DNA of 64,000 bases, taken from IMG/VR virus record IMGVR_UViG_3300017917_003822, positions 124,001 to 188,000 of that record. One strand, written 5' to 3'. The notes under the pieces were generated by a model. The model was not told the DNA's origin. It searched no databases and saw nothing but the letters and a program-made list of their open reading frames with translations. The first letter of the stretch is position 1; every line of letters begins with the position of its first letter. Both the position numbers and the translations under genes were made by a program. This document shows positions 4,183-54,319 of the stretch, one piece after another.

Positions 4183-4284
4183 GTTGACTTTTTGTCGGGT
4201 TGAATATCACCAATTATGACAATTTGTCCTAGTCTATTGTTTGGAATTGAATTTGATATATTTGAATTAAAAAAAATAAAATAT

Positions 4285-4659
4285 ATGAATTCGAAAAATT
4301 TTTACCAAACGGCTATAAGCTCACTGTTCGAAGGGAAATGCCCCGGAGATAACTTATTTAATAAATTCTTAGAATCAATTGATGATTCATGCAGAATCGA
4401 AAAAAAAGAATCCGGATGGGAATTAAGACTGGCACTCCCTGGGGTTACAAAAAATGAAACCGAAATTAAGGTGGATGGAAATAATCTTATTGTTAACATC
4501 GATTCTAAAAATGGGTGGGTTAAAAAATCTCAAAAGGCTTTTATTCTACCAAGATCAGCTAATCATGAATCTATATTTGCTGAGATGAAGGATGGAATAT
4601 TATCAATATCCATATCTACAAAGAATGATCAGAAATCTAAAAATATTAAAATAAATTAA
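4285..4659 (+). CDS. Hsp20/alpha-crystallin small heat shock protein
   Basis: LALPGV.K.E..IKVDGN.L...F.LP...[13 protein letters not shown]; start moved to ATG 4285. Confidence 0.85.
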
Positions 4660-4663
4660 GAAA

Positions 4664-7460: not shown

Positions 7461-7847
7461 ATGGAAAGAGAAAGATTAATACAGGAGGAATATCTGGACG
7501 ATCCTTGGAAAATGATGGTCTGCTGCATATTATTAAACCAAACAAACAACAAGCAGGTAAGACCCATTTTAAGCTCCGTATTCGAGCTTATACCAAATCC
7601 AATATCTGCTATTAGGTGTGATGTAGAAGTGCTGGCAGCTGTCATAAAAACAACCGGATTTCAGAACTTAAAGGCTTCTCGAATACGGAGGATGAGTCAA
7701 AAATGGCAAGATGGATTTTCCGATGTTATGGATCTTCCGGGGATTGGAAAATACGGCAGAGACTCATGGGAAATATTCATAAACAAAAATCTAGAGACCA
7801 GCCCAACGGACAAGAAACTCATGCTATATTTGGATTTTGTAAGATAA
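7461..7847 (+). CDS. MBD4-like HhH-GPD mismatch glycosylase (short)
   Basis: DPWKMMVCCILLNQT, LPGIGKYG.DSW.IF, D..L..Y resemble the MBD4 catalytic domain. Confidence 0.85.
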   Translation: MERERLIQEEYLDDPWKMMVCCILLNQTNNKQVRPILSSVFELIPNPISAIRCDVEVLAAVIKTTGFQNLKASRIRRMSQKWQDGFSDVMDLPGIGKYGRDSWEIFINKNLETSPTDKKLMLYLDFVR

Positions 7848-10602: not shown

Positions 10603-11082
10603 ATGGCAAATATAGACAACCAATGCAAAGATCTTCCCGTTGAGAATGACTACGTGAAGTCCACAAACCACCTGGAAAAATTGATGAACCTTCAGAAAAA
10701 TACGCAAGAAGGTGTTTATGGTTACGATTTTAAAAACCTCACCTTAGGTGAAATTAAGGATTTCTGGTTATGGAATACCAGAGCAATAGATGATGAGATA
10801 TCGGAAGCATACGACGCTTTAGGCGGTGTTTCTAACAACGGAGAAACATCAATCGGAAATGCAGTTTGGAAGCCATGGAAAAGCAATCACAAGAAAGCTT
10901 ACACCATGAAAGTATCGGACCTTTCGGAGGATGATCAGAAAGAACTTAAGATGGAACTTGTTGATATCCAACATTTCCTTTTTAATATGATGATCTCTGT
11001 GGGAATGACTGCGGAAGAACTATTTAACTATTACCTCTCCAAGAATAAGGAGAATATCAGAAGACAAGAAAATAATTACTAA
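10603..11082 (+). CDS. Dimeric all-alpha dUTPase/dCTPase (MazG-like, T4 gp56-like)
   Basis: EISE, KPWK and ELVDIQHF motifs. Confidence 0.8.
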
Positions 11083-11096
11083 AAAAACAAAAAACA

Positions 11097-12080
11097 ATGG
11101 AGAATTTTTATCCTTTACCAGAACCGATCCTTCAGGAAAATCCAAATAGATTTGTTCTTTTCCCTATAGAGCATCCGGATATCTGGCAAATGTACAAACA
11201 ACAAGAAGCGTGTATCTGGACAGCAGAGGAAATAGATCTAGCACAAGATCTTAATGACTGGAGAAACAAATTAAACGATGATGAAAGATTCTTTATAAAA
11301 AATGTATTAGCTTTCTTTGCTGCTTCTGATGGAATAGTAAATGAAAATTTAGCTGAAAATTTTGTTTCTGAGGTTCAATATACCGAAGCAAAGTTTTTTT
11401 ATGGGTTTCAGATAATGATGGAAAATATCCATTCTGAAACTTACTCCTTACTAATCGATACCTATATTCAGGATGCCGCTGAAAAAGACAGACTTTTCCG
11501 TGCGATTGATACAATCGATGCTGTTAAGAAAAAGGCTGAGTGGGCTCTTAAATGGATCGAGTCTCCTCACTTTCAGGAGAGGCTTATTGCTTTCGCTGCG
11601 GTTGAGGGAATTTTCTTTAGTGGATCATTCTGCTCTATCTTTTGGCTGAAAAAAAGAGGTCTGATGCCAGGATTATCTTTTTCTAATGAGCTTATATCTA
11701 GAGACGAGGGTATGCACTGTGATTTTGCAGTAATGTTACATAACAACCACTTAGCTAATAAAGTTTCTGAGGAAAGAATCAAAGAAATTATTACCAGTGC
11801 CTTAGAAATTGAGAAGGAGTTTATTATAGAGTCACTGCCTGTTAGACTTATAGGTATGAACTCGGATTTGATGAAACAGTATCTTGAATTTGTTGCTGAT
11901 AGATTACTTGTTGATTTGGGATGTTCTAAAGTTTATAATTCAGAAAATCCTTTTGATTTTATGACAAACATCTCACTACAGGGTAAAACTAATTTCTTCG
12001 AGAAGAGAGTTGGTGAATACCAGAAATCCGGTGTAATGAACAAATCGGAAGATCCTTTTGATTTTGACGGCGAATTCTAA
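11097..12080 (+). CDS. nrdB: Ribonucleotide reductase class Ia beta subunit
   Basis: [50 protein letters not shown]. Confidence 0.97.
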
Positions 12081-12190
12081 ATTTATACCAATCAAATCTA
12101 AACTTTCCTGTGTTATTTTTTAATCCAGGGGAAAGCTAATATTATATTGGCTTTAAAAGAAATTTAATAAAAAAAAAACAAAAAGAAGAA

Positions 12191-14677
12191 ATGCAAGTTG
12201 TAAAAAGAGACGGTTCTAAAGAACCGGTAAGGTTTGAGAAGATTTCTAACAGAATCAGAAAAATGACATATGGTTTAAATGCTGATTATGTTGACGCCAT
12301 GGAGATAGCACAAAAAGTAATTGCTGGTATTTATGACGGAATATCAACCCAGGAATTAGACAATTTAGCTGCAGAAACAGCAGCTTCACTTATTCCTAGA
12401 CACCCCGATTATTCAATTCTTGCTTCAAGAATTGCGGTTTCTAGATTACATAAAACAACAAAGAAAAAATTCTCGGAAACGATCCAAACTTTATATGACT
12501 ACATAGATCCTGAGACGAATCTTCCGGCTGGTTTAATTAATGAAGAAACTTATCAGACGGTAATGAAGCACAAACAAAAATTGGATGGTGCTATCATACA
12601 TGAAAGAGATTTTGAATTTGAATATTTTGGATTTAAAACACTGGAAAAAAGTTACCTATTAAAAACCCACGGTGAGGTCTGTGAAAGTCCTCAGCACATG
12701 TATATGAGAGTTTCAGTTGGTATTTGGGGAGAAGATATCAAGAACGTAATTAAAACTTATGAGCTACTTTCCAATCATATGGCCACTCACGCAACACCAA
12801 CATTATTCAATGCAGGTACTAAAAAACCACAGCTTTCTTCTTGCTTCTTATTGACCGTATCCGATGACTCCATTGCTGGAATTTATAAAACTCTTTCTGA
12901 CGTAGCTATTATTTCACAGAATGCTGGTGGAATAGGTTTAGCTATCCATAATGTCAGAAGTACAGGTTCTTATATCAGAGGAACTAACGGTACCTCAAAC
13001 GGAATTGTACCAATGCTTAAAGTTTTCAACGAAACTGCAAGATATGTAGATCAGGGAGGGGGTAAAAGAAAAGGATCTTTCGCAATTTACTTGGAGCCTT
13101 GGCACTCTGATATTGAGGATTTCTTAGATCTAAGAAAGAATACTGGTAAGGAAGAATTAAGAGCTAGAGATCTTTTCCTAGCATTATGGACTCCTGATCT
13201 TTTCATGAAGAGAGTTAAAGAGGATGGAATCTGGAGTTTATTCTCACCATCTGAAGTTCCTGGTCTTTGGGAAAAATATGGAGATGAATTTGAAAAAGCA
13301 TACACCGAAGCTGAGGAAGCTGGTAAGGCAAGAAAAACCATTAAAGCTAGGGATTTGTGGACAAAGATTATAGAATCACAGATAGAAACAGGAACACCTT
13401 ATATGCTGTATAAGGATGCTGCAAATAAAAAATCAAACCAGAAGAATTTAGGTACCATTAAGAGTTCAAACTTATGTACTGAAATTTTGGAATATACAGA
13501 TAAGGACGAACAAGCAGTTTGTAACTTGGCTTCGATCCCAGTTAACAAGTTCCTAAAATCAACTGATGCTAGAACATCTAAGATTTGCAAAGGAAGATGT
13601 GAGGTTGACCATAATGCTCTTTATGATGTTGCATATCAGATAACATTGAACTTAAATAAGGTTATTGACGTTAACTACTATCCAACTCCTGAGACTAAAA
13701 AATCAAATTTAAGACATAGACCTATTGGTATAGGTATTCAAGGTCTGGCTGATTTGTTTGCAATTATGGGTATTCCTTTTGCATCACCAGAAGCCAAAAG
13801 AATTAACGAGGAAATATTCGAAACTATTTATTTTGCCGCAATGTCAGCCTCAATGTATTTGGCCAAGAGAGACGGTAAATATGAAACTTTCGATGGTTCA
13901 CCATTAAGTCAAGGACAATTCCAATTTAATTTATGGGGATTTGAGGACAAAGACCTTTCTGGAAGATGGGATTGGGACAAATTAAGAAAGGATGTGATGA
14001 AGCACGGAGCTAGAAACTCTTTATTATTAGCTCCTATGCCAACAGCTTCTACAGCTCAGATTATGGGTAACAATGAGGCATTCGAACCTTTCACCTCGAA
14101 CATCTACACTAGAAGAACTCTTAGCGGTGAATTTATATTAGTTAACAAGCACCTAGTTAAGGATTTGATTGCTCTGGATCTTTGGAGCGAAGATATGAAG
14201 AATTTGATCATCTTACATAAAGGATCTGTTCAGAACATACCTCAAATTCCTGAAAATATAAGAGAAACATATAAAACAGTTTGGGAAATAAAGCAGAAAG
14301 ATCTAATTGAGATGTCTGCCGGTAGAGGTAAATTTATTTGTCAATCCCAATCACTAAATTTGTTTATTGAGAATGTTAATTCTGCTAAACTTACTGCTGC
14401 ACACTTCCACTCTTGGGAACTTGGTCTTAAAACGGGAATGTATTATCTAAGAACAAAATCTGCTGTTGATGCTATTGCAGGTTTGGGAATAGACATGGAG
14501 AAAGCTAAGAAAGCTCAGAAACTTGCCGATGAGGGATCTCTGATTCAAGAAAAAAGGGAATCTAAAATAGATCTTGGTATGACTAGCGAAGAACTCAGTA
14601 AAGCTGCAGAAGAAGTTGCATCTGGGATAACATGCAGTCTGGATAACCCCGACGATTGTATAGCATGTGGATCTTAA
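12191..14677 (+). CDS. nrdA: Ribonucleotide reductase class Ia alpha subunit with ATP cone
   Basis: VVKRDG ATP cone, [38 protein letters not shown]-terminal CIACGS. Confidence 0.98.
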
Positions 14678-14699: not shown

Positions 14700-15320
14700 A
14701 TGGAAAATATAGTTAAAAGTTTTAGTGGATTTTTAAATGAAAGAGAATTACCAGACGAACAAGGTGACATCCTAGTTATGCTAGGAGCACCAGGTTCTGG
14801 TAAAGGTACACTTTCCAAAGAACTCCAGGATAAGTATGGAATACATCATATTTCCACCGGAGATCTCATCAGAAAATCTGATGATCCGGAGCTTAAAAAA
14901 ATCATAGACGGTGGTAATTTTTTACCCGATGATATGATGATTAAGATTTTAAGGAAAGAACTTAAAAAAGTGGATGTAACTAAAGGAATAATATTTGATG
15001 GTTTTCCAAGAACTATCAAACAAGCTAAAAGACTTGATTCCATGCTAGGTAAAATGGGTCTTGGTCTTAATCATGCAATCTTTTTGGATCTTCCTGAAGA
15101 AACTGCCAAAAATAGAATCAGAGAAAGAGCTAAGAAGGAGGACAGAAAGGATGACACCAGTGACGAGATCATCAACAAAAGGTTCGATGAATATCACGAG
15201 AAAACATTTCCTCTTTTAGATTTCTACAAGAGAAGCAGAAAACTAATAAAGATTGATGCATCTGAAGGCAAGGAGGGAGTATTAAAATCAGTTTCTAAAA
15301 AACTGGGATTGAAGAAATAG
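14700..15320 (+). CDS. adk: Adenylate kinase (short LID) with CTS-like N-terminal extension
   Basis: GAPGSGKGT, HISTGDLIR, FDGFPRTIKQA, R.DD. Confidence 0.93.
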   Translation: MENIVKSFSGFLNERELPDEQGDILVMLGAPGSGKGTLSKELQDKYGIHHISTGDLIRKSDDPELKKIIDGGNFLPDDMMIKILRKELKKVDVTKGIIFDGFPRTIKQAKRLDSMLGKMGLGLNHAIFLDLPEETAKNRIRERAKKEDRKDDTSDEIINKRFDEYHEKTFPLLDFYKRSRKLIKIDASEGKEGVLKSVSKKLGLKK

Positions 15321-24969: not shown

Positions 24970-26118
24970 ATGACTGCAGAGGAAAGAATAGAAATACAGG
25001 AAAAGATCGAAAGCCTGACTTCTCTTAAGAATGAGTTGAAAAACGAGGAACAGGCAATTAAATTGACAATGAACTCCATCTATGGTGCGATTGGTAACAA
25101 CTGGTTTGTTTGTTTCAACCCGGATGTAGCTGAAGCCGTTACTTTGCAGGGTCAGGATCTAATTAAATACTCGGAAAAAATTCTACATAAATATTTTCAC
25201 GAACATTGGCATCTTGACACGGAGCTCCATGAAAAGTTAGGAGTTACTGAGGTAAAGAAAGTAACCAAGCCTCTTGTTATTTATGGAGACACTGATTCTA
25301 ATTATGTTACATTCCAGGAGGTTGTCGATTCGTGTAACTATCAGGGAGATGCGAAGGATTTGATTTTAAAGATTAATGAATATAGACTTAATGAGTATTT
25401 AAGAAAATGCTTCGACATCTACTCTAAAAAATGGAACACTGACAACTATCAGGACTTTGAGCTTGAGACTCTTTCTTTTAATGCTATCTTTTTAGGTAAG
25501 AAAAAATACGTTGCTAACTTAGCTTATGACTCTGGTATTCACACTGATCCTCTTTCACAACTTAAATTTACTGGAGTTGAGATGATAAAGGGTGGGACCC
25601 CACCTTTTGTTAGAGAGAAATTGGTTTATTTAACAAGATTCATATTCTCCCGAGGTAGAAATTTTGACATAAGGGAGTTTGTTAGGGAACTTAAGAATAT
25701 CAAGAAGGAATTCAAAGTACAGGAGCCAAAGAATATATCTGCTTCGGTTAACATTAACAACTACGAAAAGTTTATATTAAATGATACCACTGCTTTTGAG
25801 GTTGCAAAAGCATGTCCGATTCACGTCAGAGCTTCCGGCTATCATAATTTCCTTCTAAATAATTCTAAATACAAGAGCAAATACTCTCTTATCAGAAGCT
25901 CAGAGAAGGTTAATTATTATTTCGTTAAAACAAAATCTGTGGCAGACAATAATGTTTTCGCATACCCTCAGGGAACATTTCCGTACGAGTTTGCCCCACC
26001 AATAGACTATGACGAGCAGTTTACCAAGACTATTCTCGATCCGATTAATAGATTTATTGAAGTAATGGGGTATAATAAGATAAGTCCAAATCTTTTCATG
26101 ATAAACGCTTTATTTTAA
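24970..26118 (+). CDS. Family B DNA polymerase, C-terminal subunit (motifs B and C, thumb)
   Basis: KLTMNSIYG, YGDTDS, KKKY, FTGVE. Confidence 0.93.
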   Translation: MTAEERIEIQEKIESLTSLKNELKNEEQAIKLTMNSIYGAIGNNWFVCFNPDVAEAVTLQGQDLIKYSEKILHKYFHEHWHLDTELHEKLGVTEVKKVTKPLVIYGDTDSNYVTFQEVVDSCNYQGDAKDLILKINEYRLNEYLRKCFDIYSKKWNTDNYQDFELETLSFNAIFLGKKKYVANLAYDSGIHTDPLSQLKFTGVEMIKGGTPPFVREKLVYLTRFIFSRGRNFDIREFVRELKNIKKEFKVQEPKNISASVNINNYEKFILNDTTAFEVAKACPIHVRASGYHNFLLNNSKYKSKYSLIRSSEKVNYYFVKTKSVADNNVFAYPQGTFPYEFAPPIDYDEQFTKTILDPINRFIEVMGYNKISPNLFMINALF

Positions 26119-34613: not shown

Positions 34614-34988
34614 ATGAGAATAGCTGTAATTGCACACGATAACAAGAAGGCAGATATGGTTGCCTTTATTATGAAGAGGCTTGATTTCTTTTCTAAGGTT
34701 CAAATAGTTGCTACTGGAACAACCGGACAACACATAGAGCACGCAGGCTTGGATGTTGACTTAAAAAAATCTGGACCTAAGGGAGGTGACGCACAAATAG
34801 CCAGTGAGATAGTTGAAAATAAAATTCAGGGTGTTCTGTTCTTTATAGATCCTTTAACATCACATGCTCACGAGGTTGATGTACAGATGCTTCTTAGACT
34901 GTGTAATGTTTATAATATACCAATAGCTACTAATTATGCTACAGCTAAACTACTAGTAAAATCAATAAAAAATAACAGGGAAGAATAA
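34614..34988 (+). CDS. mgsA: Methylglyoxal synthase
   Basis: IAVIAHDNKK, ATGTTG, SGPKGGD.QI, FFIDPL..HAHEVDV..LLRLC. Confidence 0.95.
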   Translation: MRIAVIAHDNKKADMVAFIMKRLDFFSKVQIVATGTTGQHIEHAGLDVDLKKSGPKGGDAQIASEIVENKIQGVLFFIDPLTSHAHEVDVQMLLRLCNVYNIPIATNYATAKLLVKSIKNNREE

Positions 34989-35683
34989 TGAGAATAGTAT
35001 TTATTTCAGATACACATACACAACACGCACACTCGGGATTAAATAAAATGCTGTCTGATATACTTGACGAAAACCCGGAATCTGTGTTGGTTCATTGTGG
35101 TGACATTTCTTCCAGAGGTAGAATACAAGAGGTTACTGATTTTCTGGATTGGTTTAATGGATTAGGATTTAAATATAAAATATTCATTGCGGGGAATCAT
35201 GATTTTCTTTTCGAGGATGATCCCGAGATGATAACGGATCTTTTGTCAACTAAATATAAAAATTTAATATATCTTAATGATAGTGGAGTAGAAATTGATG
35301 GAATTAAATTCTGGGGAAGCCCGGTCACTCCTAGATTTTTTAATTGGGCTTTTAATAGAGACTCCGATATTCAATACCACTGGTCAATGATTCCGTATGA
35401 CACCAATGTTCTAATTACACATGGACCTCCGTATGGCATTTTAGATTTTACACAGAGAGACAGAAAACCTGTGGGTTGTCATTATCTTAGGAGAAGACTC
35501 TTTGATTTGAAGGATTTGAAGATTCATGCGTTTGGACATATTCATGAGGCTTTTGGTAGTCAGGTGGGAGATACTGAGGATGATTTTTCCGAAGAATCTC
35601 TTAATAATATACATTTTGTTAATGCTAGCTATCTTAATTTAGATTATAGACCGGTGAATAGACCGATCTGTATCGATATATGA
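34988..35683 (+). CDS. Calcineurin-like metallophosphoesterase (MPPED-like)
   Basis: ISDTH, HCGD, IAGNHD, THGPP, FGHIHE. Confidence 0.92.
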   Translation: MRIVFISDTHTQHAHSGLNKMLSDILDENPESVLVHCGDISSRGRIQEVTDFLDWFNGLGFKYKIFIAGNHDFLFEDDPEMITDLLSTKYKNLIYLNDSGVEIDGIKFWGSPVTPRFFNWAFNRDSDIQYHWSMIPYDTNVLITHGPPYGILDFTQRDRKPVGCHYLRRRLFDLKDLKIHAFGHIHEAFGSQVGDTEDDFSEESLNNIHFVNASYLNLDYRPVNRPICIDI

Positions 35684-35746
35684 TAATTTTTTAATTTGTA
35701 AAGTGAAATAATTCCATAAAAAACAGTAAAACATATAAACCAAACA

Positions 35747-36541
35747 ATGAAAACATTTTACAAACCTTCGGAGGCAATCAAATGGACAAAAGAGCGTCTC
35801 TATAATCATGGTTATGTTGTTAAAACTGAAAAGTGGCAAGGTATAGAATCACCCGATGATATGTGGGAAACCATGAACCACTCATTTCAGTTCTTTATTC
35901 CTCATACAATAGAAGAACTAGTGGATGAGGTTAAACCTAATCTTCCATGGGCAGACGATCATTTCGAGGAGAGAGTTGGTAGACTCCCAGTAAATCCTCC
36001 ACCTTCACACACCTACTGGCCATTCGCTAGAAAGAACAACGAGCAATTTGGGGGTAATACAAAATTCTCTCACACATACCCAGAGAGAATCTGGCCAAAA
36101 AGAGCCCCAATAGATAACGAAACGGGAAAGGTCGCAAAGAAACCTCTGAAAGGAATCCGGTACGAATATGGAGATTTTGGAGATGTTGTTGATCTAATGG
36201 AGAAAGAACCATTTACCAGACAGGCATTTTTACCTATATGGTTTCCCGAAGATACTGGAACAGTACACGGTGAGAGAGTACCTTGCACTATTGGATATCA
36301 CTTTATGAGAAGAGGCGAGAATCTTCATATGGTTTATTATATTAGATCTTGCGACTATGTTAGGCATTTTAGAGATGATGTTTATATGGCATGCAAGAAG
36401 CTTATGTGGATGTTGGATATTCTTAAAAAAAGAGATTCTAAAAACTGGGCAAAGGTTAAACCTGGTTATTTTGCTATGCACATTACGTCATTGCACTGCT
36501 TCAATAGCGAAAAAGGTATTTTAAAACAATCAAAAGTATAA
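35747..36541 (+). CDS. Thymidylate synthase-fold protein, probable dCMP hydroxymethylase/methylase
   Basis: VPCTIGYHF (catalytic C), RSCDYVRHFRDD with Asp at the Asn177 position, HITSLH. Confidence 0.8.
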   Translation: MKTFYKPSEAIKWTKERLYNHGYVVKTEKWQGIESPDDMWETMNHSFQFFIPHTIEELVDEVKPNLPWADDHFEERVGRLPVNPPPSHTYWPFARKNNEQFGGNTKFSHTYPERIWPKRAPIDNETGKVAKKPLKGIRYEYGDFGDVVDLMEKEPFTRQAFLPIWFPEDTGTVHGERVPCTIGYHFMRRGENLHMVYYIRSCDYVRHFRDDVYMACKKLMWMLDILKKRDSKNWAKVKPGYFAMHITSLHCFNSEKGILKQSKV

Positions 36542-40204: not shown

Positions 40205-40771
40205 ATGAAATATAATCTTATAGCCGGAGTGGACGAAGTTGGCAGAGGATGTCTCTCTGGGCCGGTTGTTGCAGCAGCTGTTATCTTGCCCGAGGGTTTC
40301 AGTGATCCCCGAATTAAGGACAGCAAATTGATAAAAAGTCCTAAAAAAAGGGAAGAGATAGCCAGGGTTATTAAGGAGAATGCTATTTCTTGGGGAATTG
40401 GTGCTAGTTCACCGCAGGAAATTGACCAGATGAATATTCTACAAGCGACATATTTAGCTATGAGAAGAGCCATCGATTCATGTTCAAAAACACCAGATTT
40501 CTTGTATGTGGATGGCGATAAATTCATAGGACATAACGGAATTCCCTATGAATGTGTAATTAAAGGTGACTCTAAAATATTGCAAATTTCTGCTGCTTCG
40601 ATACTTGCTAAAGTTCACCGCGATCAACTGATGCAAACTTTAGATTCCGAATATCCCAAATATTTGTGGTCAAGAAACGTTGGATATGGAACTGCGGACC
40701 ACATCAAGGCTATTAGAGAGATAGGAATAACTAAACACCACAGAAAAACATTTTGTCAAAATTTTATATAA
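40205..40771 (+). CDS. rnhB: Ribonuclease HII
   Basis: AGVDEVGRGCLSGPVVAAAV, DSK, VDG, KGD, AASILAKV.RD, GYGT..H. Confidence 0.96.
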   Translation: MKYNLIAGVDEVGRGCLSGPVVAAAVILPEGFSDPRIKDSKLIKSPKKREEIARVIKENAISWGIGASSPQEIDQMNILQATYLAMRRAIDSCSKTPDFLYVDGDKFIGHNGIPYECVIKGDSKILQISAASILAKVHRDQLMQTLDSEYPKYLWSRNVGYGTADHIKAIREIGITKHHRKTFCQNFI

Positions 40772-43389: not shown

Positions 43390-45342
43390 GTGAGAATAGC
43401 CTACATAGTACCACATCTTTCAACCGGTGGGATGCCTGAATATCTCAGAAATAAGATAGAAAAGTTAAGAGAAGTTTCCGATGTTTGGGTTTTTGAAAAA
43501 TTTAAAGAACCGGTCTATAATACCATTCGTTTAAGAATTGAGAAAATAATAGGTGAGGAGAGGATAATAACATGGGGAAAGGATCAAACTGGATCTTTCT
43601 TGAATAAGATTTTTGAAATAAATCCTGACATTATTCATTTTGAGGAACCATGCGAACAATTTGTCGATGATTTCCTTCTCGATGTAATATATTCAGGTGA
43701 TAGAAAATATAAAATATTTGAGACCCTTCATGACTCCTCGATTAAACCGGAGGAGAAAAGATACCTTCCTGATAAGTTTATCGTTGTTAGTCCATGGCAG
43801 GTTTATTTACTTAAAGACCTTGGTGTCCCGATTGAGATTATTGAACACGAGCTTAGTGAAAAAATTCTACCGTCGAGAGAAGAATGTATGAATCAACTTG
43901 GGTTGGATCCCAATAAAAAACATGTTGTTCAGATAGGTATTTTTACCCCAAGAAAAAATCAGAAGGAAACATCTGAAATTGCTAGATTTTTACCTGACGT
44001 TCAATTCCATTTTGTTGGTACATTGGCCGATAATTATGCTTGGTATTGGGAACCGATAGTTAGAGGTCTTCCGCCAAATTGTAAAATATGGGGTGAAAGA
44101 GATGATGTTGATCTTTTTTATAAGGCATGTGATCTCGTCATATTTCCATCAGTAGAATTGTTTAATGACAAGGAGACAAGTCCACTAGTAATTAGAGAAA
44201 CCATCAACATCGGAACCAAATTACTACTAAGAAACTTACCTGTTTATGTTGGAATGTATCAGGAATCTGATAATGTCACATTTATGAAAAACACAGCAAT
44301 TGAAAATGCTAATCTAATAAAAAGTACACTAAATATGGAACTCACCGGAACAAATAACAGAAACTTAGAAATCAGATTTAATCCCGAAAATAATGAGATT
44401 TCATTCTCCTTTTTGAGAAATGATTTGGTAGGTAACTTCTGGATCTCAGTTAAGGATGTTGATTCAAACGCATGTATCTATGCTTTCCAAATAAATTTGG
44501 AAGGTCCATGGCAGAATTTCTGGTGCATTCCGATACCTAAAGAATTTTATGATTTCGGCGGTGACAAGAATTTCACTGGATTCAAATTAGAAATTTATGT
44601 GGATAAAATGGATTCTTCTCCACTCATTTCTGAGAATTTCATAATCAAGAAAAGGATTAATAAAAAGATGATACCTAGCAACCCTTTTATAAATTTCGAT
44701 CCAGTTTTCGTTAACTACTCTCAATTTTTTATCGACGGTATCTATAATTTATTCTTTGCTGGACAGAGAATAAAAACAGCTATCGACATTGGTGCTAATG
44801 TTGGTCTTTTTACTGAATGGGTGCTTGATAGATTCGGCAGTGATACGGAGGTGATCTCGGTGGAACCTAACGAAACCGCAGCAAGGGCTTTCCAGGAGAT
44901 TCATAAAGATAAGAATAATGTGAGATTAGCAAAATATGCTCTTTCGGACAAATCGGGTGAATTCATAGAGATGCTGGTAAACCCGGACAACAGCTTGATT
45001 TCAAGTATAGAAGGGACAGGTGAAGGATACAGTGAAAGGCAAACCGCTGAAACCATCACCCTGATGGATCTGATGGAGAAATATAACATGACAGGGGCTG
45101 ATCTATTAAAAGTTGACATAGAGGGAGCTGAATATCAGATGTTTGATGCTGTGACTTCGGATGATCTAAGAAGATTTAAGAATCTCCTGATAGAATTCCA
45201 TAATAATGATGGTCGAGCGACACAGCTTATTAAGAAAATCAGGGAGGCTGGATTTTATATCGATCTGAGAGATGATGACACTAGATACACAACGGACGAG
45301 AATAATGATAGAGGTACAATATTCGCAACAAGAATAGATTAA
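43390..45342 (+). CDS. GT4-like glycosyltransferase fused to an FkbM-family methyltransferase
   Basis: PHLSTGGMP, RKNQ, E..PLVIRE; IDIGANVG, SVEPN, LLKVDIEGAE. Confidence 0.88.
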   Translation: MRIAYIVPHLSTGGMPEYLRNKIEKLREVSDVWVFEKFKEPVYNTIRLRIEKIIGEERIITWGKDQTGSFLNKIFEINPDIIHFEEPCEQFVDDFLLDVIYSGDRKYKIFETLHDSSIKPEEKRYLPDKFIVVSPWQVYLLKDLGVPIEIIEHELSEKILPSREECMNQLGLDPNKKHVVQIGIFTPRKNQKETSEIARFLPDVQFHFVGTLADNYAWYWEPIVRGLPPNCKIWGERDDVDLFYKACDLVIFPSVELFNDKETSPLVIRETINIGTKLLLRNLPVYVGMYQESDNVTFMKNTAIENANLIKSTLNMELTGTNNRNLEIRFNPENNEISFSFLRNDLVGNFWISVKDVDSNACIYAFQINLEGPWQNFWCIPIPKEFYDFGGDKNFTGFKLEIYVDKMDSSPLISENFIIKKRINKKMIPSNPFINFDPVFVNYSQFFIDGIYNLFFAGQRIKTAIDIGANVGLFTEWVLDRFGSDTEVISVEPNETAARAFQEIHKDKNNVRLAKYALSDKSGEFIEMLVNPDNSLISSIEGTGEGYSERQTAETITLMDLMEKYNMTGADLLKVDIEGAEYQMFDAVTSDDLRRFKNLLIEFHNNDGRATQLIKKIREAGFYIDLRDDDTRYTTDENNDRGTIFATRID

Positions 45343-45344
45343 TA

Positions 45345-47669
45345 ATGAGAATAGCTCAAGTAACACCAGGCAACATACCAATTCCAACTAAGGGGTGGGG
45401 TGCTGTTGAAAAAATAATATGGGAGTATACCAAGGTTTTGAGAAATCTAGGTCACGAGGTTGAAGTACTTTATGCTGATGATGTTATACCCGGTGAGTGG
45501 GATGTTGTTCATGTTCACATGGCAAATTTAGCCTTGATCTTAAAGGAGAGAGGTATACCATATGTTTTCTCGCATCACGATCATCACGCATATCATTTCG
45601 GTAAGAACTCGGATGTTTATAAACAGAATTTAGAGGCAATAAAAGGGTCACAACTTTCTTTTGTTCATGCTAAATATCTGGTTGAATATTTTGGTTCACC
45701 TAAGAATCTCAGATATTTGAATCACGGAGCAAATACTAAGGATTATGGATTTTTTGACAGATCCAGAAATGTAGAAGAAGGTAATATTAGACTTCTGATG
45801 ATGGCAAACAATGGGCTTGGTGGAAATCATATGTATGACAGGAAGGGATTTATTCCTGGGGTAGAAGCTGCAAGATTACTTGGATTACCTATCACCATAA
45901 TTTGTCCTAAATCCGGTAATTACGATCTTATCTCTAGCATTAGTCCATATGATAAGATGAATGTTCTATATGATTTAGAATATGAGGATACGCTAACTGA
46001 GATGTCAAATCACGAGATATTCCTTAATCCCTCTATGTTAGAAGCAGGACATCCAAATCTAACAGTAACCGAGTCTATCGCCAGAGGGGTACCTGTAGTC
46101 GGAACAGCGGAGGAGGAGATACCGGGGATCAGAAGAATACCACTTCCAACAGATTTAACCGTTGATGTCAATGATCTTGTTGATGGAATCTCTGAAGTCA
46201 TATCCAAATACCCGTCATATGTTCTCGAATGCAGGGATCAGAGAGAAATTTATTCCTGGGAGGTTGTGGTGTCCAGGATGTTAATGGACTACACAAATCA
46301 TTTGAATATAAGTCAGAAAAGTCTTCTTCTTGACAGCTATAAATCAACAACCAAGAGAGAAGTTTCAAAAACACCTCATAGCGGGATCTATTCCTGGTTT
46401 AAATCTAGACCTTTCTTGTATAAGTCAACGAAGACTAATTATGGAACTTCCGTTTCTTTTATTGACAAAATCACTGGTGAAATCATACATAAATGCAATT
46501 TCCCGACAGAACCTAGATCCTGGATACGTGCCATCTTTCCATCGGATAGGTATATTGATTGGAAAATAGTTGTTAGAGAAGGGGCAAAAATAATACATGA
46601 GAATGAGATGGATCTCCGAAATCATCACGTTCTGGTTAGAGGAGCCAACTCGGAGGACTATCAAAAACTAATTGAGTTTACCAATCTAACTCATTGTATA
46701 CTAACCGTTGATTCTGATAGTGATCTTCCATTTTTTAAATTAAAAGAAAACACAAACGATCATTATTATCTTGAGTTAAATATGAGCCAGATTTTGGACT
46801 TCTTCATAGAGAAGCCTAAGGTACAAAAAAGAACTCTGATAAACTTATCTCCTGAGTCTCTAGGTGACAATATTGCGTTCGTCCCATATGCAAACGAATA
46901 TGGTAAAAAAATTGGGGAGATAGTGGATGTTCACTGTAAGTATGCATTCCTATTTGATGGAGTTTATGAATACATTAACTTTATTGACAACCCGGATTCT
47001 CAAAAATACACAGACTATATTAACATCGATTATCTTTTCGATGTTCCGCTTCAGAGAGGATTCTCCGACCAATTGCTTCTAAATTATGAGGAGATTCGTC
47101 CAAGGGTAAAAGAACCTTCAGGTCAACCACAAAAAATTACCGGGAAATATATCTGTTTTTCCATGCACAGTACTGCTCAGGCTAAGCATTGGAATAATAA
47201 CAATTCTTGGTCTAAATTGTGTGATGAGCTTAAAAAGGTTGGTCTTAAGGCAGTTTGTATCGACAGACATTACTCGTTTGGCATAGAGGGTCATTGGAAC
47301 GAGATACCATCCAACTGCATAAATATGACTGGAGGAGACCTGAATAGTATGTCATTACTCATTCAAAATTGTGAGTTTTTCATAGGATTATCAAGCGGAT
47401 TGTCTTGGTTGGCACATGGTCTAGGTAAGAAAGTCGTTATGATCTCCGGGGTAACATCCAAAGATAATGAGTTTACCAAAGATTGCATCAGATTGCACAG
47501 AGAAGATGTTTGTAATTCGTGTTTCAATAAACCAGATCAATATAAGTTCGACAAGGGAGATTGGCTTTGGTGTCCTGTTCACAAAGGAACGCCAAGAGCT
47601 TTTGAATGCACAAAGAAGATCTCAGCCAAACAGGTTATGGATTCACTGAAAGCAAATAAGTGGATATAG
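45345..47669 (+). CDS. GT4-like domain fused to an Aah/TibC-type (autotransporter) O-heptosyltransferase-like domain
   Basis: N-terminal IP.KGWGAVEK, EAGHP; C-terminal SLGDNIAF, HSTAQAKHWN, FIGLSSGLSWLAH, C.SC...WLWCP.H...ECTK. Confidence 0.8.
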   Translation: MRIAQVTPGNIPIPTKGWGAVEKIIWEYTKVLRNLGHEVEVLYADDVIPGEWDVVHVHMANLALILKERGIPYVFSHHDHHAYHFGKNSDVYKQNLEAIKGSQLSFVHAKYLVEYFGSPKNLRYLNHGANTKDYGFFDRSRNVEEGNIRLLMMANNGLGGNHMYDRKGFIPGVEAARLLGLPITIICPKSGNYDLISSISPYDKMNVLYDLEYEDTLTEMSNHEIFLNPSMLEAGHPNLTVTESIARGVPVVGTAEEEIPGIRRIPLPTDLTVDVNDLVDGISEVISKYPSYVLECRDQREIYSWEVVVSRMLMDYTNHLNISQKSLLLDSYKSTTKREVSKTPHSGIYSWFKSRPFLYKSTKTNYGTSVSFIDKITGEIIHKCNFPTEPRSWIRAIFPSDRYIDWKIVVREGAKIIHENEMDLRNHHVLVRGANSEDYQKLIEFTNLTHCILTVDSDSDLPFFKLKENTNDHYYLELNMSQILDFFIEKPKVQKRTLINLSPESLGDNIAFVPYANEYGKKIGEIVDVHCKYAFLFDGVYEYINFIDNPDSQKYTDYINIDYLFDVPLQRGFSDQLLLNYEEIRPRVKEPSGQPQKITGKYICFSMHSTAQAKHWNNNNSWSKLCDELKKVGLKAVCIDRHYSFGIEGHWNEIPSNCINMTGGDLNSMSLLIQNCEFFIGLSSGLSWLAHGLGKKVVMISGVTSKDNEFTKDCIRLHREDVCNSCFNKPDQYKFDKGDWLWCPVHKGTPRAFECTKKISAKQVMDSLKANKWI

Positions 47670-47702: not shown

Positions 47703-48296
47703 ATGAAAAGAATTTTATTTATTTTTCTACTTCTTCCTCTGATATCCTTCTCCCAGATTTTAAGGGATTCGGTTAGAGTAAAAAACGAGATCTATGAGGT
47801 GATTTACAGTGAAAAATTGGAACAACCCAGATGGATCAGATACGCCGTTCAATGTCCAAACGGAACAGCTTCTAGATCTGGAATGGACTTCTATACCAAT
47901 GACACGATAAAAACTTCTAGTCACGAAGATTATGTAAAAAATGTTTATGATAAGGGGCATTTAGCACCAGCCGCTGATTTTAATTGTACCAGAGAGCTAC
48001 TATACAAGACTTTTAGCTATTTAAACTGCGCTTTACAGAATCAGTATCTCAACAGAGGAGTTTGGAGAATGTTGGAGGAGTATGAAAGAGAATTAGCTAA
48101 GAAGGAACCAGTTATAGTGGAGATAGAGGTAGTTTTCGACTCAAATTCATTAAAACTGCCTACCGGGGCAACAGTTCCTAATGGATTCTATAAAACAATT
48201 ATTCTGGAGAGGTCCAAAAAAACCATTAAATATTATTTTCCAAACGAAGCTCCAAAGAAGGCCAGGTTCTTTGACTATGAAATATCGAAGAAATAA
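47703..48296 (+). CDS. Secreted DNA/RNA non-specific endonuclease (NucA/EndA type)
   Basis: Signal peptide ...ISFS-Q; YDKGHLAPAAD, LNRGVWRMLE, VPNGFYK. Confidence 0.9.
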   Translation: MKRILFIFLLLPLISFSQILRDSVRVKNEIYEVIYSEKLEQPRWIRYAVQCPNGTASRSGMDFYTNDTIKTSSHEDYVKNVYDKGHLAPAADFNCTRELLYKTFSYLNCALQNQYLNRGVWRMLEEYERELAKKEPVIVEIEVVFDSNSLKLPTGATVPNGFYKTIILERSKKTIKYYFPNEAPKKARFFDYEISKK

Positions 48297-52473: not shown

Positions 52474-53115
52474 ATGGAAGATTTAGATAAAAAATACCAG
52501 TCTCTTTTGCAAGATGTTCTTAATAATGGGGTAACAGAGGAGAAACTTTTAGAAATAAAAGAATACTCAGAGAAACAAATTGAGAAAATTAGACAAGAGG
52601 AAGAAAATGAAATCAGGAGGAAAAATTCAGTAAAAAATAAAACTAAATTATCTCAGCTTACATCAGATGATAGAATTTTAGGGATAAGAATTTCATGGAA
52701 TGATGATTCTAAAGGAGTTAAGATAGATGAATTAGGTAATAGTTGGTCTGTTGATATAATTGGGTATTGTGATGTTAGAGGGTATGAGGATAAGAAAAAG
52801 AGAAAAAGTGACTATCATAGAATATCAATTAGTCATAAAAAAGAAGCGTTTGGCCACGCAGTATCACTGACTGATGAGGAATCAGAAAATCCATATTTAC
52901 TAGTTATTGATACTATGGGAAATGGGTACGATTCTTTTTTCACTTTATCACCTGAGACTTGGGAAGAAGATTTAATGAAGGCTTTAATCGACCAAAAAGA
53001 ATGGAGAATTAGACAGCATCATAGAGAAATTTCAATCTTAAGAAAAAAAGTTGGAGCTTTCTTAAAAAGTAAAAATAAAATCAATAAATTCATAAAGAAT
53101 GAACAATCTAGATAA
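52474..53115 (+). CDS. Hypothetical protein beginning with a copy of the ThyA N-terminus
   Basis: MEDLDKKYQSLLQDVLNNGVT matches the next gene's start. Confidence 0.65.
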   Translation: MEDLDKKYQSLLQDVLNNGVTEEKLLEIKEYSEKQIEKIRQEEENEIRRKNSVKNKTKLSQLTSDDRILGIRISWNDDSKGVKIDELGNSWSVDIIGYCDVRGYEDKKKRKSDYHRISISHKKEAFGHAVSLTDEESENPYLLVIDTMGNGYDSFFTLSPETWEEDLMKALIDQKEWRIRQHHREISILRKKVGAFLKSKNKINKFIKNEQSR

Positions 53116-54319
53116 ACAATACCAAGCACTTCTTCAAGACATTCTTGATAATGGGGTAACAAAACAAGACCGTACAGGAACGGGAACAATCTCAGTATTT
53201 GGAAGACAAATCAGACATAAAATGTCAGAAGGGTTTCCACTTCTTACAACTAAGAAAATGCCATTCAAAACCATCGTAACAGAACTTCTTTGGTTCTTAC
53301 GAGGTGATACAAACATCAAATACTTGGTTGATAATAATTGCCATATTTGGGATGGAGATGCTTATAAGAATTATTGCAAATCATTTGAAAATCAATCAAT
53401 TTTGGATAAGTATTCGTTTGATACAGACCCAATCACAATAGAGATGTTTGTTGAGAAAATCAAAACAAATAATGAGTTTGCTAAAAAGTGGGGTGAATTA
53501 GGTCCAATTTACGGTAAGCAATGGAGAAGTTGGGTAAGAGGTGTTGATTATGATGTTGATTATGAAAATGGAATACAGGATGAAATAGACCAAATAACAA
53601 ACTTAATCAACGACCTTAAAACAAATCCAGACTCAAGACGATTAATGGTTAATGCTTGGAATGTTGGAGAATTAGACCAAATGGTTCTTCCACCTTGTCA
53701 TTATGGATTTCAAGTTTATACAAGAGAGTTGAGTGATAGTGAAAGAGCAAAATTATACGAACAGAAAACAAATGTAGACACTTCTTTCTTTCCTGTTCTT
53801 AGAGAAACATTAGATTTTCACAACATTCCAACCAGAGCAATCTCTTTAATGTGGAATCAACGTTCAGTAGATACATTCTTAGGTTTACCATTTAATATTG
53901 CATCGTATGGGCTATTGCTTGAAATTATTGCAAAGGAAGTAAATATGGTTCCTGATGAATTGATTGGTAATTTAGGTGATGTTCATTTATATTCAAATCA
54001 TATTGAACAAGCAAAAGAGCAAATTGGTCGAGAGCTTACATGGGAAGAAAAAATCCAATGGGTAATGAAGAACACTGATGTCGAGCTTGAGAACCTGTAC
54101 ATAACTGAAGCAGCTGCTGCTTTAGAAGCAACAACTAGGTGGCCATACCCTCTACCAACATTAAAAGTCAGTTGGTATATCGATAATTGGAATACTCCAG
54201 AAGCTAAAGAAGTTAGGAAAAACGAGTTTGACGCTTATATAAGACAAATGAGGACTAGTGATTTCATTCTTGAAAATTATAAATCACACCCAGCAATTAA
54301 AGCACCTTTAAGCAATTAA
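53099..54319 (+). CDS. thyA: Thymidylate synthase (with insertions)
   Basis: DRTGTGT, FPLLTTKK, ELLWFLRG, GPIYGKQWR, LPPCH, RSVDTFLGLPFN, HLYSNH. Confidence 0.97.
   Translation: MNNLDKQYQALLQDILDNGVTKQDRTGTGTISVFGRQIRHKMSEGFPLLTTKKMPFKTIVTELLWFLRGDTNIKYLVDNNCHIWDGDAYKNYCKSFENQSILDKYSFDTDPITIEMFVEKIKTNNEFAKKWGELGPIYGKQWRSWVRGVDYDVDYENGIQDEIDQITNLINDLKTNPDSRRLMVNAWNVGELDQMVLPPCHYGFQVYTRELSDSERAKLYEQKTNVDTSFFPVLRETLDFHNIPTRAISLMWNQRSVDTFLGLPFNIASYGLLLEIIAKEVNMVPDELIGNLGDVHLYSNHIEQAKEQIGRELTWEEKIQWVMKNTDVELENLYITEAAAALEATTRWPYPLPTLKVSWYIDNWNTPEAKEVRKNEFDAYIRQMRTSDFILENYKSHPAIKAPLSN

What the first reader, a model, noticed from the sequence alone, without database searches (positions are those of the whole stretch)
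35747..36541. Second TS-fold gene with a cytosine-specificity Asp: probable modified-C genome
Seen: RSCDYVRHFRDD aligns with T4 gp42 RSNDVVFGFRND, whereas the true ThyA (53099) has RSVDTFLGLPFN. Known: Asp versus Asn at this position selects dCMP versus dUMP. A gp56-like dCTPase/dUTPase (10603), several glycosyltransferases and an MBD4-like gene are also present. GGATCC/GAATTC/AGATCT sites appear frequent by eye (not counted). Inference: 5hmC or 5mC DNA, possibly further glycosylated.
Basis: partly seen in the sequence, partly recalled or inferred. Interest (0 to 1): 0.7.

Follow-up and report, generated by a model that had tools for sequence, protein, structure and literature searches.

The report
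Cytosine-type TS-like enzyme, jumbo phage
A 270-kb phage carries a normal thymidylate synthase plus a second enzyme of the same fold built for cytosine and a T4-type dCTPase, so it probably swaps C in its DNA for a C5-modified cytosine, but the enzyme belongs to a large untested branch whose product cannot be read from sequence.

Summary
ORF 35747-36541 (264 aa) is a thymidylate-synthase-fold protein (AF2 pLDDT 94; Z about 20 to TS, MilA, T4 dCH and AfhB; predicted homodimer). The spacing from its catalytic Cys180 to Asp211 is ungapped and identical to E. coli ThyA Cys146 to Asn177. Asp211 is invariant in 58/58 family members.

The genome (270,629 bp) also encodes a canonical ThyA, a true gp56-type dCTPase (37% identical to T4 gp56), a dCMP deaminase, RNR and an MBD4-like glycosylase. 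It has no C5 DNA methyltransferase. This is a T4-style kit for replacing C at the nucleotide level.

The enzyme fits none of the three characterised Asp-type subfamilies:
- It has Arg, not Asp/Glu, three residues before the Cys, so the T4/MilA hydroxymethylase signature fails.
- It keeps Asp169, so it is not a flavin 5-hydroxylase.
- It lacks the C-terminal lid of the methyl-transferring enzymes.

It belongs to a large viral clade (4183 proteins) that includes Mycobacterium phage Muddy gp46 and Gordonia CT-cluster phages. A modified-C genome is likely. 5hmC is the best guess, and neither 5mC nor a new C5 group is excluded. DNA glycosylation is unsupported. The restriction-site argument is uninformative.

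The parts
35747..36541 (+). Asp-type thymidylate-synthase-fold enzyme, 264 aa. Key residues: catalytic C180, R177 at -3, T181, R200-S201-C202-D203, R206-H207, D211 (the N177 position), H250, and a short C-terminus.
10603..11082 (+). gp56-type dCTPase/dUTPase (all-alpha NTP pyrophosphohydrolase).
   Evidence: 37% identity to T4 gp56 over 147 aa, E 3e-29. PHROG 173 E 2e-19. 1400 phage records hold homologues, almost all Straboviridae, with Shewanella phage Thanatos-2 the best.
53099..54319 (+). Canonical ThyA with Leu at -3, His at +1 and Asn at the 177 position. It carries an internal insertion and a long C-terminal extension.
   Evidence: PF00303 E 2.5e-91; alignment
14700..15320 (+). Adenylate-kinase-like NMP kinase. 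It is the only candidate phage kinase for the modified dNMP, and this role is inferred, not shown.
   Evidence: PF00406 E 4e-39. NCBIfam adenylate kinase 171.6 bits, just under the 187-bit cut-off. No T4 gp1 or Tmk homologue elsewhere in the genome.
11097..14677 (+). Ribonucleotide reductase small and large subunits, lying between the dCTPase and the kinase.
7461..7847 (+). MBD4-like HhH-GPD DNA glycosylase domain, 128 aa. It may repair deaminated 5-substituted C.
   Evidence: PF00730 E 2.6e-9. PDB MBD4 glycosylase domains E 7e-17 over residues 5-126.
34614..35683 (+). Methylglyoxal synthase (34614-34988) and a calcineurin-like metallophosphoesterase (34988-35683). They lie immediately upstream and are syntenic in relatives. 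Their role in the pathway is unknown.

Best explanation
The ORF is an active, homodimeric enzyme of the thymidylate-synthase fold that acts on dCMP rather than dUMP. Cys180 attacks C6 of the base. Asp211 protonates and recognises N3/N4 of cytosine. A one-carbon unit is added at C5, most likely from methylene-tetrahydrofolate. Because the active site has no sealing C-terminal lid, the exocyclic methylene intermediate is probably hydrated, giving 5-hydroxymethyl-dCMP. The gp56-type dCTPase removes dCTP/dCDP and returns dCMP. The dCMP deaminase and the canonical ThyA keep dTTP synthesis going. A kinase, possibly the phage's adenylate-kinase-like enzyme, together with host NDP kinase raises the modified nucleotide to the triphosphate, and the phage polymerase incorporates it in place of C. 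Shown here: the fold, the conserved catalytic residues, the Asp, deoxy-type residues at the two MilA specificity positions, and the co-encoded T4-type enzymes. Inferred: the substrate, the cofactor, the product and the presence of the modified base in DNA.
For: Fold and dimer: AF2 pLDDT 94; VIA Z 20.0-20.4 to AfhB, MilA and EcTS. The homodimer score is 0.85 against a best control of 0.00. That mark was reached by 21 of 30 proteins solved as pairs and 0 of 23 solved as single chains. The runs agree in at least 77% of contacts and pLDDT is at least 83. The interface includes the R158 loop. Catalytic set in 58 family members: C180, R200, S201, D211 and H250 in 58/58; D203 and Y111 in 57/58. Asp at the N177 position selects dCMP (Hardy & Nalivaika and Liu & Santi, as cited). 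In metaviromes, Asp177 and a non-His residue at 147 mark contigs with modified C; this family has T or S at 147. Deoxy rather than ribo: the MilA positions K133 and A176, whose change to R and S shifts preference to dCMP, are R158 and S201 here (alignment). No C-terminal lid: the model ends at EcTS residue 222, and the tail after H250 has a median of 17 aa. That lid seals the TS active site for hydride transfer and is absent in T4 dCH. The closest solved sequence relative is the hydroxymethylase MilA, profile E 7e-10. Genome kit: gp56 orthologue, dCMP deaminase, canonical ThyA, RNR, MBD4-like glycosylase, no C5 methyltransferase, no trimeric dUTPase. In small phages the same family sits in the module kinase, NTP-PPase, TS-like, dCMP deaminase, DNA pol A. 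That is the neighbourhood reported for modified-cytosine metavirome contigs. A relative has NDP-sugar genes inserted directly beside the gene.
Against: The published hydroxymethylase signature is not met. The residue three before the Cys is Arg in 58/58, where T4 dCH and MilA have Asp/Glu, and T4 D145N makes no 5hm-dCMP. The T4 Ser94 position is His in 52/58. The T4 Glu60 (EcTS Glu58) position, which activates methylene-THF, is Asn or Asp. Gly173 is His and Leu172 is Arg. Folate use is therefore not assured. No T4 gp1-type dNMP kinase and no T4 beta-glucosyltransferase homologue were found. Palindrome statistics show nothing distinctive. No experimental datum on any member of this clade was found in the literature searched.
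Confidence: 0.5

Rival explanations
1. It is a dCMP methyltransferase (5-methyl-dCMP synthase, as in Xanthomonas phage Xp12 or PaMx74). The genome would then carry 5mC in place of C, and the MBD4-like glycosylase would repair T:G mismatches from 5mC deamination.
For: Asp at the 177 position and Asp169 retained. N177D alone turns TS into a dCMP methylase. Five of seven TS homologues from deaminase / PRA-PH / pol A modules of modified contigs made 5mdCMP, and the small-phage modules of this family have that architecture. MBD4-type glycosylases act on T:G (established knowledge; for the match).
Against: Methyl transfer needs hydride transfer from a tightly sealed cofactor. The sealing C-terminal segment (EcTS 223-264) is missing, while an Xp12-like architecture (Elanor) keeps a long C-terminus and an adjacent DHFR. 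The -3 residue is a charged Arg, not a water-excluding hydrophobic residue. No DHFR is seen in any of the family's neighbourhoods or in this genome.
Confidence: 0.15
2. It is a fourth catalytic class of Asp-type TS-fold enzyme. It installs a C5 group other than methyl, hydroxymethyl or hydroxyl, or it uses a cofactor other than methylene-THF, through the family-specific Arg177 / His109 / Arg206-His207 constellation.
For: The signature fits none of the three characterised Asp-type classes. Family-specific residues are strictly conserved: R177, E75, R76 and N83 in 58/58; H207 and H109 in 52/58. There is precedent: the 5hodCMP synthases of the same fold unexpectedly use flavin and O2. The mTHF-activating Glu is not conserved.
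Against: Asp169, which binds the pterin in TS and T4 dCH, is kept in 57/58. Remodelled sites can still do the same chemistry. There is no positive evidence for any alternative cofactor or product.
Confidence: 0.2
3. It is a flavin-dependent dCMP 5-hydroxylase (5hodCMP synthase, like RB69 gp48 or HY126 AfhB).
For: AfhB is nominally the top structural match, Z 20.4. The gp56 homologue's best hit is Thanatos-2, a 5hoC-type phage. The C-terminus is short.
Against: The diagnostic D169N replacement is absent: the position is Asp in 57/58 and Glu in 1/58. The Z-scores to TS, MilA and AfhB are indistinguishable.
Confidence: 0.05
4. There is no DNA modification. The enzyme serves a nucleotide-pool role, such as a dCMP to 5mdCMP to dTMP bypass with the deaminase, or it acts on a non-DNA substrate as MilA does.
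For: Gordonia CT-cluster annotators read the same four-gene module as 'thymine synthesis'. MilA, the closest solved relative, makes an antibiotic precursor.
Against: This genome already has a canonical ThyA and a dCMP deaminase, so a bypass would be redundant. A gp56-type dCTPase is otherwise found almost only in phages that replace C fully. The residues at the MilA ribo/deoxy positions are of the deoxy type.
Confidence: 0.1

Closest known systems
T4 gp42 deoxycytidylate hydroxymethylase (T4 dCH)
   Same: TS fold, dimer, catalytic Cys, the R-S-x-D motif, Asp at the specificity position, Thr after the Cys, Tyr96 equivalent, short C-terminus, and a gp56 dCTPase and dCMP deaminase as partners.
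   Different: Only about 18% identity. Arg instead of Asp145, His instead of Ser94, Asn/Asp instead of Glu60, His instead of Gly at the 173 position. No gp1 kinase or beta-gt in the genome.
MilA, CMP 5-hydroxymethylase of mildiomycin biosynthesis (PDB 5B6D/5JNH)
   Same: Best solved match by profile (E 7e-10) and among the best by fold. Asp at the specificity position and Arg at the 172-equivalent position.
   Different: MilA has Asp at -3, and Lys133/Ala176 that favour the ribonucleotide. This family has Arg at -3 and Arg158/Ser201, the deoxy type.
5hodCMP synthases (RB69 gp48, DLP3 gp80, HY126 AfhB)
   Same: TS fold, Asp at the 177 position, Thr after the Cys, short C-terminus; a phage nucleotide-level route to modified C.
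   Different: They carry the diagnostic D169N and Glu at -3 and use flavin plus O2. This family keeps Asp169 and has Arg at -3.
5-methyl-dCMP synthases of Xp12/PaMx74-type phages
   Same: Asp-type TS homologue beside an NTP pyrophosphohydrolase and a deaminase in a replication module.
   Different: The Xp12-like example read here (Xanthomonas phage Elanor; its product was not tested here) keeps a ThyA-like long C-terminus, has Asn at -3 and a neighbouring DHFR. tblastn similarity to this ORF is only E about 0.4.
Canonical ThyA (the window's own copy at 53099)
   Same: Same fold and catalytic Cys/Arg/Ser/Asp/His core.
   Different: ThyA has Asn177, Leu143, His147, Glu58 and the C-terminal lid, and scores 306 bits on PF00303 against 19.5 bits for this ORF.

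Membership tests
Thymidylate synthase superfamily (fold level) | TS alpha/beta fold | tested here: met
   AF2 pLDDT 94. Foldseek E down to 6e-14. VIA Z about 20 over 203-232 residues.
Thymidylate synthase superfamily (fold level) | Catalytic Cys, plus Arg166/Ser167 phosphate ligands and His207/Tyr94 equivalents | tested here: met
   C180, R200, S201 and H250 in 58/58; Y111 in 57/58.
Thymidylate synthase superfamily (fold level) | Obligate homodimer with the Arg126' loop at the interface | tested here: met
   Prediction only: score 0.85 against a best control of 0.00. The mark was reached by 21 of 30 paired and 0 of 23 single-chain test proteins. Runs agree in at least 77% of contacts and pLDDT is at least 83. 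Residues 156-163 are in the interface.
Canonical ThyA (dUMP methylase) | Asn at position 177, Leu143, His147, PF00303 above the gathering score, C-terminal lid | tested here: not met
   Asp211, Arg177, Thr181. PF00303 19.5 bits, below the 24.3 cut-off. The model ends at EcTS residue 222.
T4-type dCMP hydroxymethylase | Asp at the specificity position (T4 D179) | tested here: met
   D211 in 58/58.
T4-type dCMP hydroxymethylase | [quoted passage not shown] | tested here: not met
   Arg177 in 58/58.
T4-type dCMP hydroxymethylase | Ser94-x-Tyr96 pair and Glu60 | tested here: not met
   His109 (52/58) at the Ser94 position, Tyr111 kept, and Asn/Asp65 at the Glu60 position. From hhalign columns with confidence about 0.8.
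5hodCMP synthase (flavin hydroxylase) | Asn replacing Asp169 (D169N) | tested here: not met
   Asp203 in 57/58, Glu in 1/58.
Xp12-type 5-methyl-dCMP synthase | Asp177 together with the capacity for hydride transfer (sealed site, DHF product). No published sequence signature was available to me. | tested here: inconclusive
   Asp is present, but the C-terminal lid is absent and no DHFR is nearby. The product is not testable here.
MilA-type CMP hydroxymethylase | Lys133 and Ala176, which favour the ribonucleotide | tested here: not met
   Arg158 (57/58) and Ser201 (58/58) at those positions.
T4-style cytosine-replacement system | gp56-type dCTPase | tested here: met
   Window 10603-11082, 37% identity to T4 gp56, E 3e-29.
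T4-style cytosine-replacement system | dCMP deaminase plus a separate dTMP synthase | tested here: met
   PF00383 at G000 21621-21941, E 4.5e-26. ThyA at 53099.
T4-style cytosine-replacement system | gp1-type dNMP kinase and DNA glucosyltransferase | tested here: not met
   No tblastn match to T4 gp1 or beta-gt in the genome. There is only an adenylate-kinase-like enzyme.
T4-style cytosine-replacement system | Modified cytosine actually present in virion DNA | not testable with these tools
   All listed runs are kept as assembled contigs. Base calls do not report modification.

The most novel reading that the evidence does not exclude
The ORF represents a fourth, biochemically untested catalytic class of cytosine-specific TS-fold enzymes. 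Its marks are Arg at -3 from the Cys, His at the 173 position, His at the T4-Ser94 position and no conserved Glu58. The class may make a C5-substituted dCMP not yet described, or reach a known one by a different cofactor or mechanism. It is widespread: more than 4000 proteins, from 270-370-kb aquatic jumbo phages to the therapeutic mycobacteriophage Muddy and Gordonia CT-cluster phages. If so, many sequenced phages would carry an unrecognised DNA modification.
Probability: 0.2. Interest if true: 0.85.

Novelty: new variant of a known kind. Interest (0 to 1): 0.62.

Why it matters
Phage DNA base replacement decides sensitivity to restriction, CRISPR and modification-dependent defences, and it supplies enzymes for epigenetic sequencing tools. 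Three product classes of Asp-type TS homologues are now predicted from single diagnostic residues (positions 143, 169 and 177). This clade breaks that scheme, so current rules would mislabel or miss it. Most members are annotated 'hypothetical' or 'thymidylate synthase', and they fall below the Pfam threshold used in published screens (describes an E < 1e-7 filter). The clade includes cultured phages (Muddy, Gordonia CT cluster, Serratia Serbin, Brevundimonas Strzyga, Clostridium CPAS-15), so the prediction is directly testable by LC-MS on existing lysates. For Muddy, a therapeutic phage, an unnoticed DNA modification would bear on host range and on recognition by innate immunity.

Tried and rejected
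(1) Megablast of 12 kb around the gene against isolated phages found nothing, so there is no close cultured relative.

(2) Palindrome and restriction-site statistics gave no distinctive pattern. This was rejected as evidence either way.

(3) The GT2 protein at 16013 was considered as a DNA glycosyltransferase. Its solved relatives are TPR-bearing protein and peptide glycosyltransferases (ThuS/SunS, GmaR), so it was not adopted.

(4) A QueC-like PP-loop protein of Muddy mentioned in the literature was considered as a pathway partner. It lies about 25 kb from the module and is absent from the other phages, so the lead was dropped.

(5) Longer family members were searched for Rosetta-stone fusions. 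Only inteins and LAGLIDADG insertions were found, with no fused enzyme.

(6) Fold ranking was tried to choose among TS, MilA, dCH and AfhB. All score Z 19.4-20.4, so it does not discriminate.

(7) Literature searches for any experimental work on this clade found none.

(8) The contig carrying P0122 was too short to give context.

(9) I could not inspect model coordinates. Whether Arg177 points at the cofactor site or at the phosphate is therefore unresolved.

(10) Read laying was not used, because reads and contigs cannot reveal base modification.
Full report
WHAT IS THERE. The window is bases 124001-188000 of a 270,629-bp viral record judged 99% complete. It is a jumbo phage of 36% G+C with almost all genes on the + strand. 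Sequence methods barely recognise it as a thymidylate synthase. Pfam PF00303 scores 19.5 bits against a gathering score of 24.3, and the best PDB sequence hit is E 0.007. PHROG 160 matches at E 6e-25. A model built from 58 diverse relatives is confident (pLDDT 94.1, pTM 0.92). It matches only TS-superfamily structures, with Foldseek E down to 6e-14 and VIA Z 19.4-20.4 over 203-232 residues. A homodimer is predicted with score 0.85 against a best control of 0.00. That mark was reached by 21 of 30 proteins solved as pairs and 0 of 23 solved as single chains. The three runs share at least 77% of contacts and pLDDT is at least 83. The interface contains the loop 156-163 that carries the TS Arg126' equivalent. 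Since TS dimers are solved, this pass shows likeness to them rather than independent proof of binding.

THE ASP IS REAL AND IN REGISTER. Counting from the catalytic Cys, the ORF has Arg +20, Ser +21, Asp +23 and Asp +31 (C180, R200, S201, D203, D211). These offsets are exactly those of E. coli ThyA (C146, R166, S167, D169, N177) and T4 gp42 (C148...D171, D179), with no gap. Profile-profile comparison of the family (A1) with a gp42 family alignment (A3) gives 96% probability and E 1.6e-9, and pairs the same residues. In 58 family members at 32-52% identity to the ORF, C180, R200, S201, D211 and H250 are invariant, and D203 and Y111 are present in 57. The window's other TS gene (53099..54319) scores 306 bits on PF00303 and has Leu at -3, His at +1 and Asn at +31, so it is a canonical ThyA.

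WHAT THE RESIDUES SAY. Published work gives four diagnostic positions in E. coli numbering.
- Position 177: Asn selects dUMP and Asp selects dCMP.
- Position 143: Leu goes with a methyl product. Asp/Glu goes with hydroxymethyl in T4-type enzymes and MilA, and T4 D145N is dead.
- Position 169: Asn marks the flavin-dependent 5-hydroxy-dCMP synthases.
- Position 147: non-His in TS homologues from cytosine-modified metavirome contigs.

The family reads Asp at 177 (58/58), Arg at 143 (58/58), Asp at 169 (57/58) and Thr or Ser at 147 (58/58). Further mappings come from hhalign columns with confidence about 0.8. The T4 Ser94 position is His (52/58). The T4 Glu60 (EcTS Glu58) position, which activates methylene-THF, is Asn (36) or Asp (12). 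Gly173 is His (52/58) and Leu172 is Arg (51/58). The protein ends at the equivalent of EcTS residue 222, and the tail after His250 has a median of 17 residues. It therefore lacks the C-terminal lid that seals the TS site for hydride transfer, a lid that T4 dCH also lacks. At the two positions that set ribo versus deoxy preference in MilA (K133 and A176; changing them to R and S shifts preference to dCMP), the family has Arg158 and Ser201.

Taken together, this is a cytosine-specific, deoxynucleotide-type, catalytically intact TS-fold enzyme. It matches none of the three characterised Asp-type classes. The missing lid, the polar -3 residue, the Thr after the Cys and MilA as nearest solved relative (profile E 7e-10) lean towards hydration and a hydroxymethyl product. 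The absent Asp/Glu-Ser-Glu triad argues against a T4-like mechanism. I could not inspect coordinates, so I cannot say whether Arg177 faces the cofactor or compensates for the two phosphate-binding arginines the family lacks (the R21 equivalent, and R127' which is Gln159).

THE GENOME AROUND IT. ORF 10603..11082 is a genuine gp56 orthologue, 37% identical to T4 gp56 over 147 residues with E 3e-29. Its 1400 homologue-bearing phage records are almost all Straboviridae. The best is Shewanella phage Thanatos-2, which carries arabinosylated cytosine derived from 5-hydroxycytosine. The genome has no trimeric dUTPase. It has one dCMP deaminase, outside the window at record coordinates 21621-21941. It has class I RNR. 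An adenylate-kinase-like NMP kinase sits beside the RNR genes. There is no T4 gp1, Tmk or DHFR and no C5 DNA methyltransferase. ORF 7461..7847 is an MBD4-type glycosylase domain (E 7e-17 to solved MBD4). It directly follows an Fpg/Nei glycosylase. From established knowledge, MBD4 removes T, U and 5hmU opposite G. These are the deamination products of 5mC, C and 5hmC, so the gene is a sensible companion for a 5-substituted-C genome. dCTPase, dCMP deaminase, ThyA and an Asp-type TS homologue together form the T4 logic for complete C replacement.

GLYCOSYLATION AND RESTRICTION SITES. Three GT-domain genes exist: 16013 (GT2), 43390 (GT1 fused to an FkbM methyltransferase) and 45345 (GT9-like). The GT2 protein's solved relatives are TPR-bearing protein and peptide glycosyltransferases. 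There is no T4 beta-gt homologue. None of the GT genes adjoins the TS-like gene. In one 349-kb relative, however, a block of NDP-sugar genes lies between the methylglyoxal synthase and the TS-like gene: PIG-L deacetylase, epimerase/dehydratase, UDP-glucose dehydrogenase, NUDIX and cupin. This recalls the sugar clusters next to gene 42 and gp48 in T-even-like phages. It is suggestive for that relative and is no evidence for this phage. Site counts (GGATCC 84, GAATTC 111, AGATCT 167) exceed base-composition expectation but are 0.67-0.83 of the Markov expectation. GATC is at 0.97. This is uninformative.

THE FAMILY ELSEWHERE. 4183 proteins match at E <= 1e-5, and 142 clusters at 50% identity match at E <= 1e-30. 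Close relatives at 70-97% identity sit on 114-373-kb contigs. In two of them the local order is the same as here: methylglyoxal synthase, metallophosphoesterase, TS-like. This phage's own sequence recurs in pond, marine, salt-marsh, freshwater, wastewater and soil metagenomes.

At about 40-45% identity the family is found in cultured siphophages: Mycobacterium phage Muddy gp46, many Gordonia phages, Serratia Serbin, Brevundimonas Strzyga, Streptomyces Zuko and Microbacterium Huwbert. At 28% identity it is in Clostridium phage CPAS-15. There it lies in a fixed module: P-loop kinase, all-alpha NTP pyrophosphohydrolase (PF08761 or PF01503), a protein of about 270 aa, the TS-like gene, usually a dCMP deaminase, and DNA polymerase A. 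A preprint reports this neighbourhood (TS, MafB19/dCMP deaminase, PRA-PH, pol A) for 70% of deaminases on metavirome contigs that survive selection for modified cytosine, against 6% on unmodified contigs. Five of seven associated TS homologues made 5mdCMP. I cannot tell whether any of those belonged to this clade. That study's IMG/VR screen required PF00303 at E < 1e-7, which most of this clade would fail. Annotators of Gordonia CT phages read the module as 'thymine synthesis'. I found no experimental work on any member.

A SIDE RESULT. The unannotated protein of about 270 aa just upstream in the small-phage modules is itself a TS-fold protein. The example used is L026:5359-6162, which is 42% identical to Strzyga_00470. 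Its family of 81 proteins has an invariant Cys110, Y-R-T-x-E (130-134), Asp142 and His174. hhalign to the main family is not significant, at 0.2% probability, yet it pairs exactly these residues with C180, R200, D203, D211 and H250. An AF2 model (pLDDT 91) finds TS-superfamily chains throughout its top Foldseek matches, with E from 1.7e-6, probability 1.00 and TM 0.4-0.58. These modules therefore carry two tandem Asp-type TS-fold genes. The jumbo phage has no copy of the second one.

VERDICT. A nucleotide-level cytosine-replacement pathway is the best explanation, at about 0.75 for 'makes a C5-modified dCMP for DNA'. Within it, 5-hydroxymethyl is the most likely product, and the whole chain as stated stands at about 0.5. 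The chemistry is not assignable from sequence, and the enzyme defines a large untested variant of a known kind. Glycosylation and restriction-site arguments add nothing. The decisive experiment is simple and already standard: co-express the enzyme with a dNMP kinase and run nucleoside LC-MS, or run LC-MS on DNA of cultured carriers such as Muddy.

Noticed in passing
L026:5359-6162 (also L005:6141-6977, L008:4208-4954, probably L004:6069-6959): In small phages that carry this family, the unannotated gene of about 270 aa immediately upstream is a second, very divergent TS-fold protein. It has an invariant Cys110, YRTxE, Asp142 and His174. AF2 gives pLDDT 91, and Foldseek's top matches are all TS-superfamily chains, E from 1.7e-6. 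These modules therefore hold two tandem Asp-type TS-fold genes, which might form a heterodimer or act in sequence. The jumbo phage has no copy.
   Followed up: yes
window 34614-34988: The phage encodes a methylglyoxal synthase at equivalog level (NCBIfam NF003559 161 bits against a cut-off of 84; TIGR00160 153.8 against 146.9). It is syntenic with the TS-like gene in related jumbo phages (L015, L017). Why a phage would make methylglyoxal is unexplained.
   Followed up: partly
window 6648-7847: An Fpg/Nei glycosylase (6648-7460) is followed directly by a 128-aa MBD4-type HhH-GPD glycosylase domain (7461-7847). A UvdE UV endonuclease lies at 19833-20771 and an RNase HII at 40205-40771. This is an unusually rich repair set for a phage.
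   Followed up: partly
P0121, P0143, P0218, P0233, P0270 (family members): Several family members are interrupted by inteins or LAGLIDADG homing-endonuclease insertions. In P0121 the intein begins near residue 174, next to the R-V-P-C catalytic motif. Such elements usually target essential, conserved sites.
   Followed up: partly
L017/L018:414-5484: In a 349-kb relative, a block of NDP-sugar genes (PIG-L deacetylase with a GNAT-like part, epimerase/dehydratase, UDP-glucose dehydrogenase, NUDIX, cupin) is inserted between the methylglyoxal synthase and the TS-like gene. It may be a sugar-donor pathway for DNA hypermodification in that phage.
   Followed up: partly
window 9102-10508 and 24970-26118: The family-B DNA polymerase appears split into two ORFs about 14 kb apart. 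The exonuclease domain and the start of the polymerase domain are at 9102, and a further polymerase-domain piece is at 24970.
   Followed up: no
window 4216-6553 and 21336-22379: The phage encodes a chaperone set: Hsp20, a full-length Hsp70/DnaK (PF00012 E 3e-259) and a DnaJ.
   Followed up: no
window 53099-54319: The canonical ThyA is 406 aa. It has an insertion of about 35 aa between the core strands and a long C-terminal extension beyond the usual end.
   Followed up: no
window 16013-17293; 43390-47669: The GT2 protein carries TPR repeats and resembles the protein and peptide glycosyltransferases SunS, ThuS and GmaR. Two adjacent large GT genes follow (GT1 fused to an FkbM methyltransferase, and a GT9-like protein), and a non-specific DNA/RNA endonuclease lies at 47703-48296. 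These are probably for glycosylating protein or glycan, not DNA.
   Followed up: partly
window 21-2984: A 987-aa protein has many collagen triple-helix repeats and a C-terminal S74 intramolecular chaperone domain. It is probably a tail fibre.
   Followed up: no
window 35700-35746 and whole window: There is no Shine-Dalgarno-like sequence upstream of the TS-like start codon, and the leader is A-rich. This fits hosts that do not use SD, such as Bacteroidota, but the host was not determined. Near-identical sequence occurs in pond, marine, salt-marsh, freshwater, wastewater and soil metagenomes.
   Followed up: no
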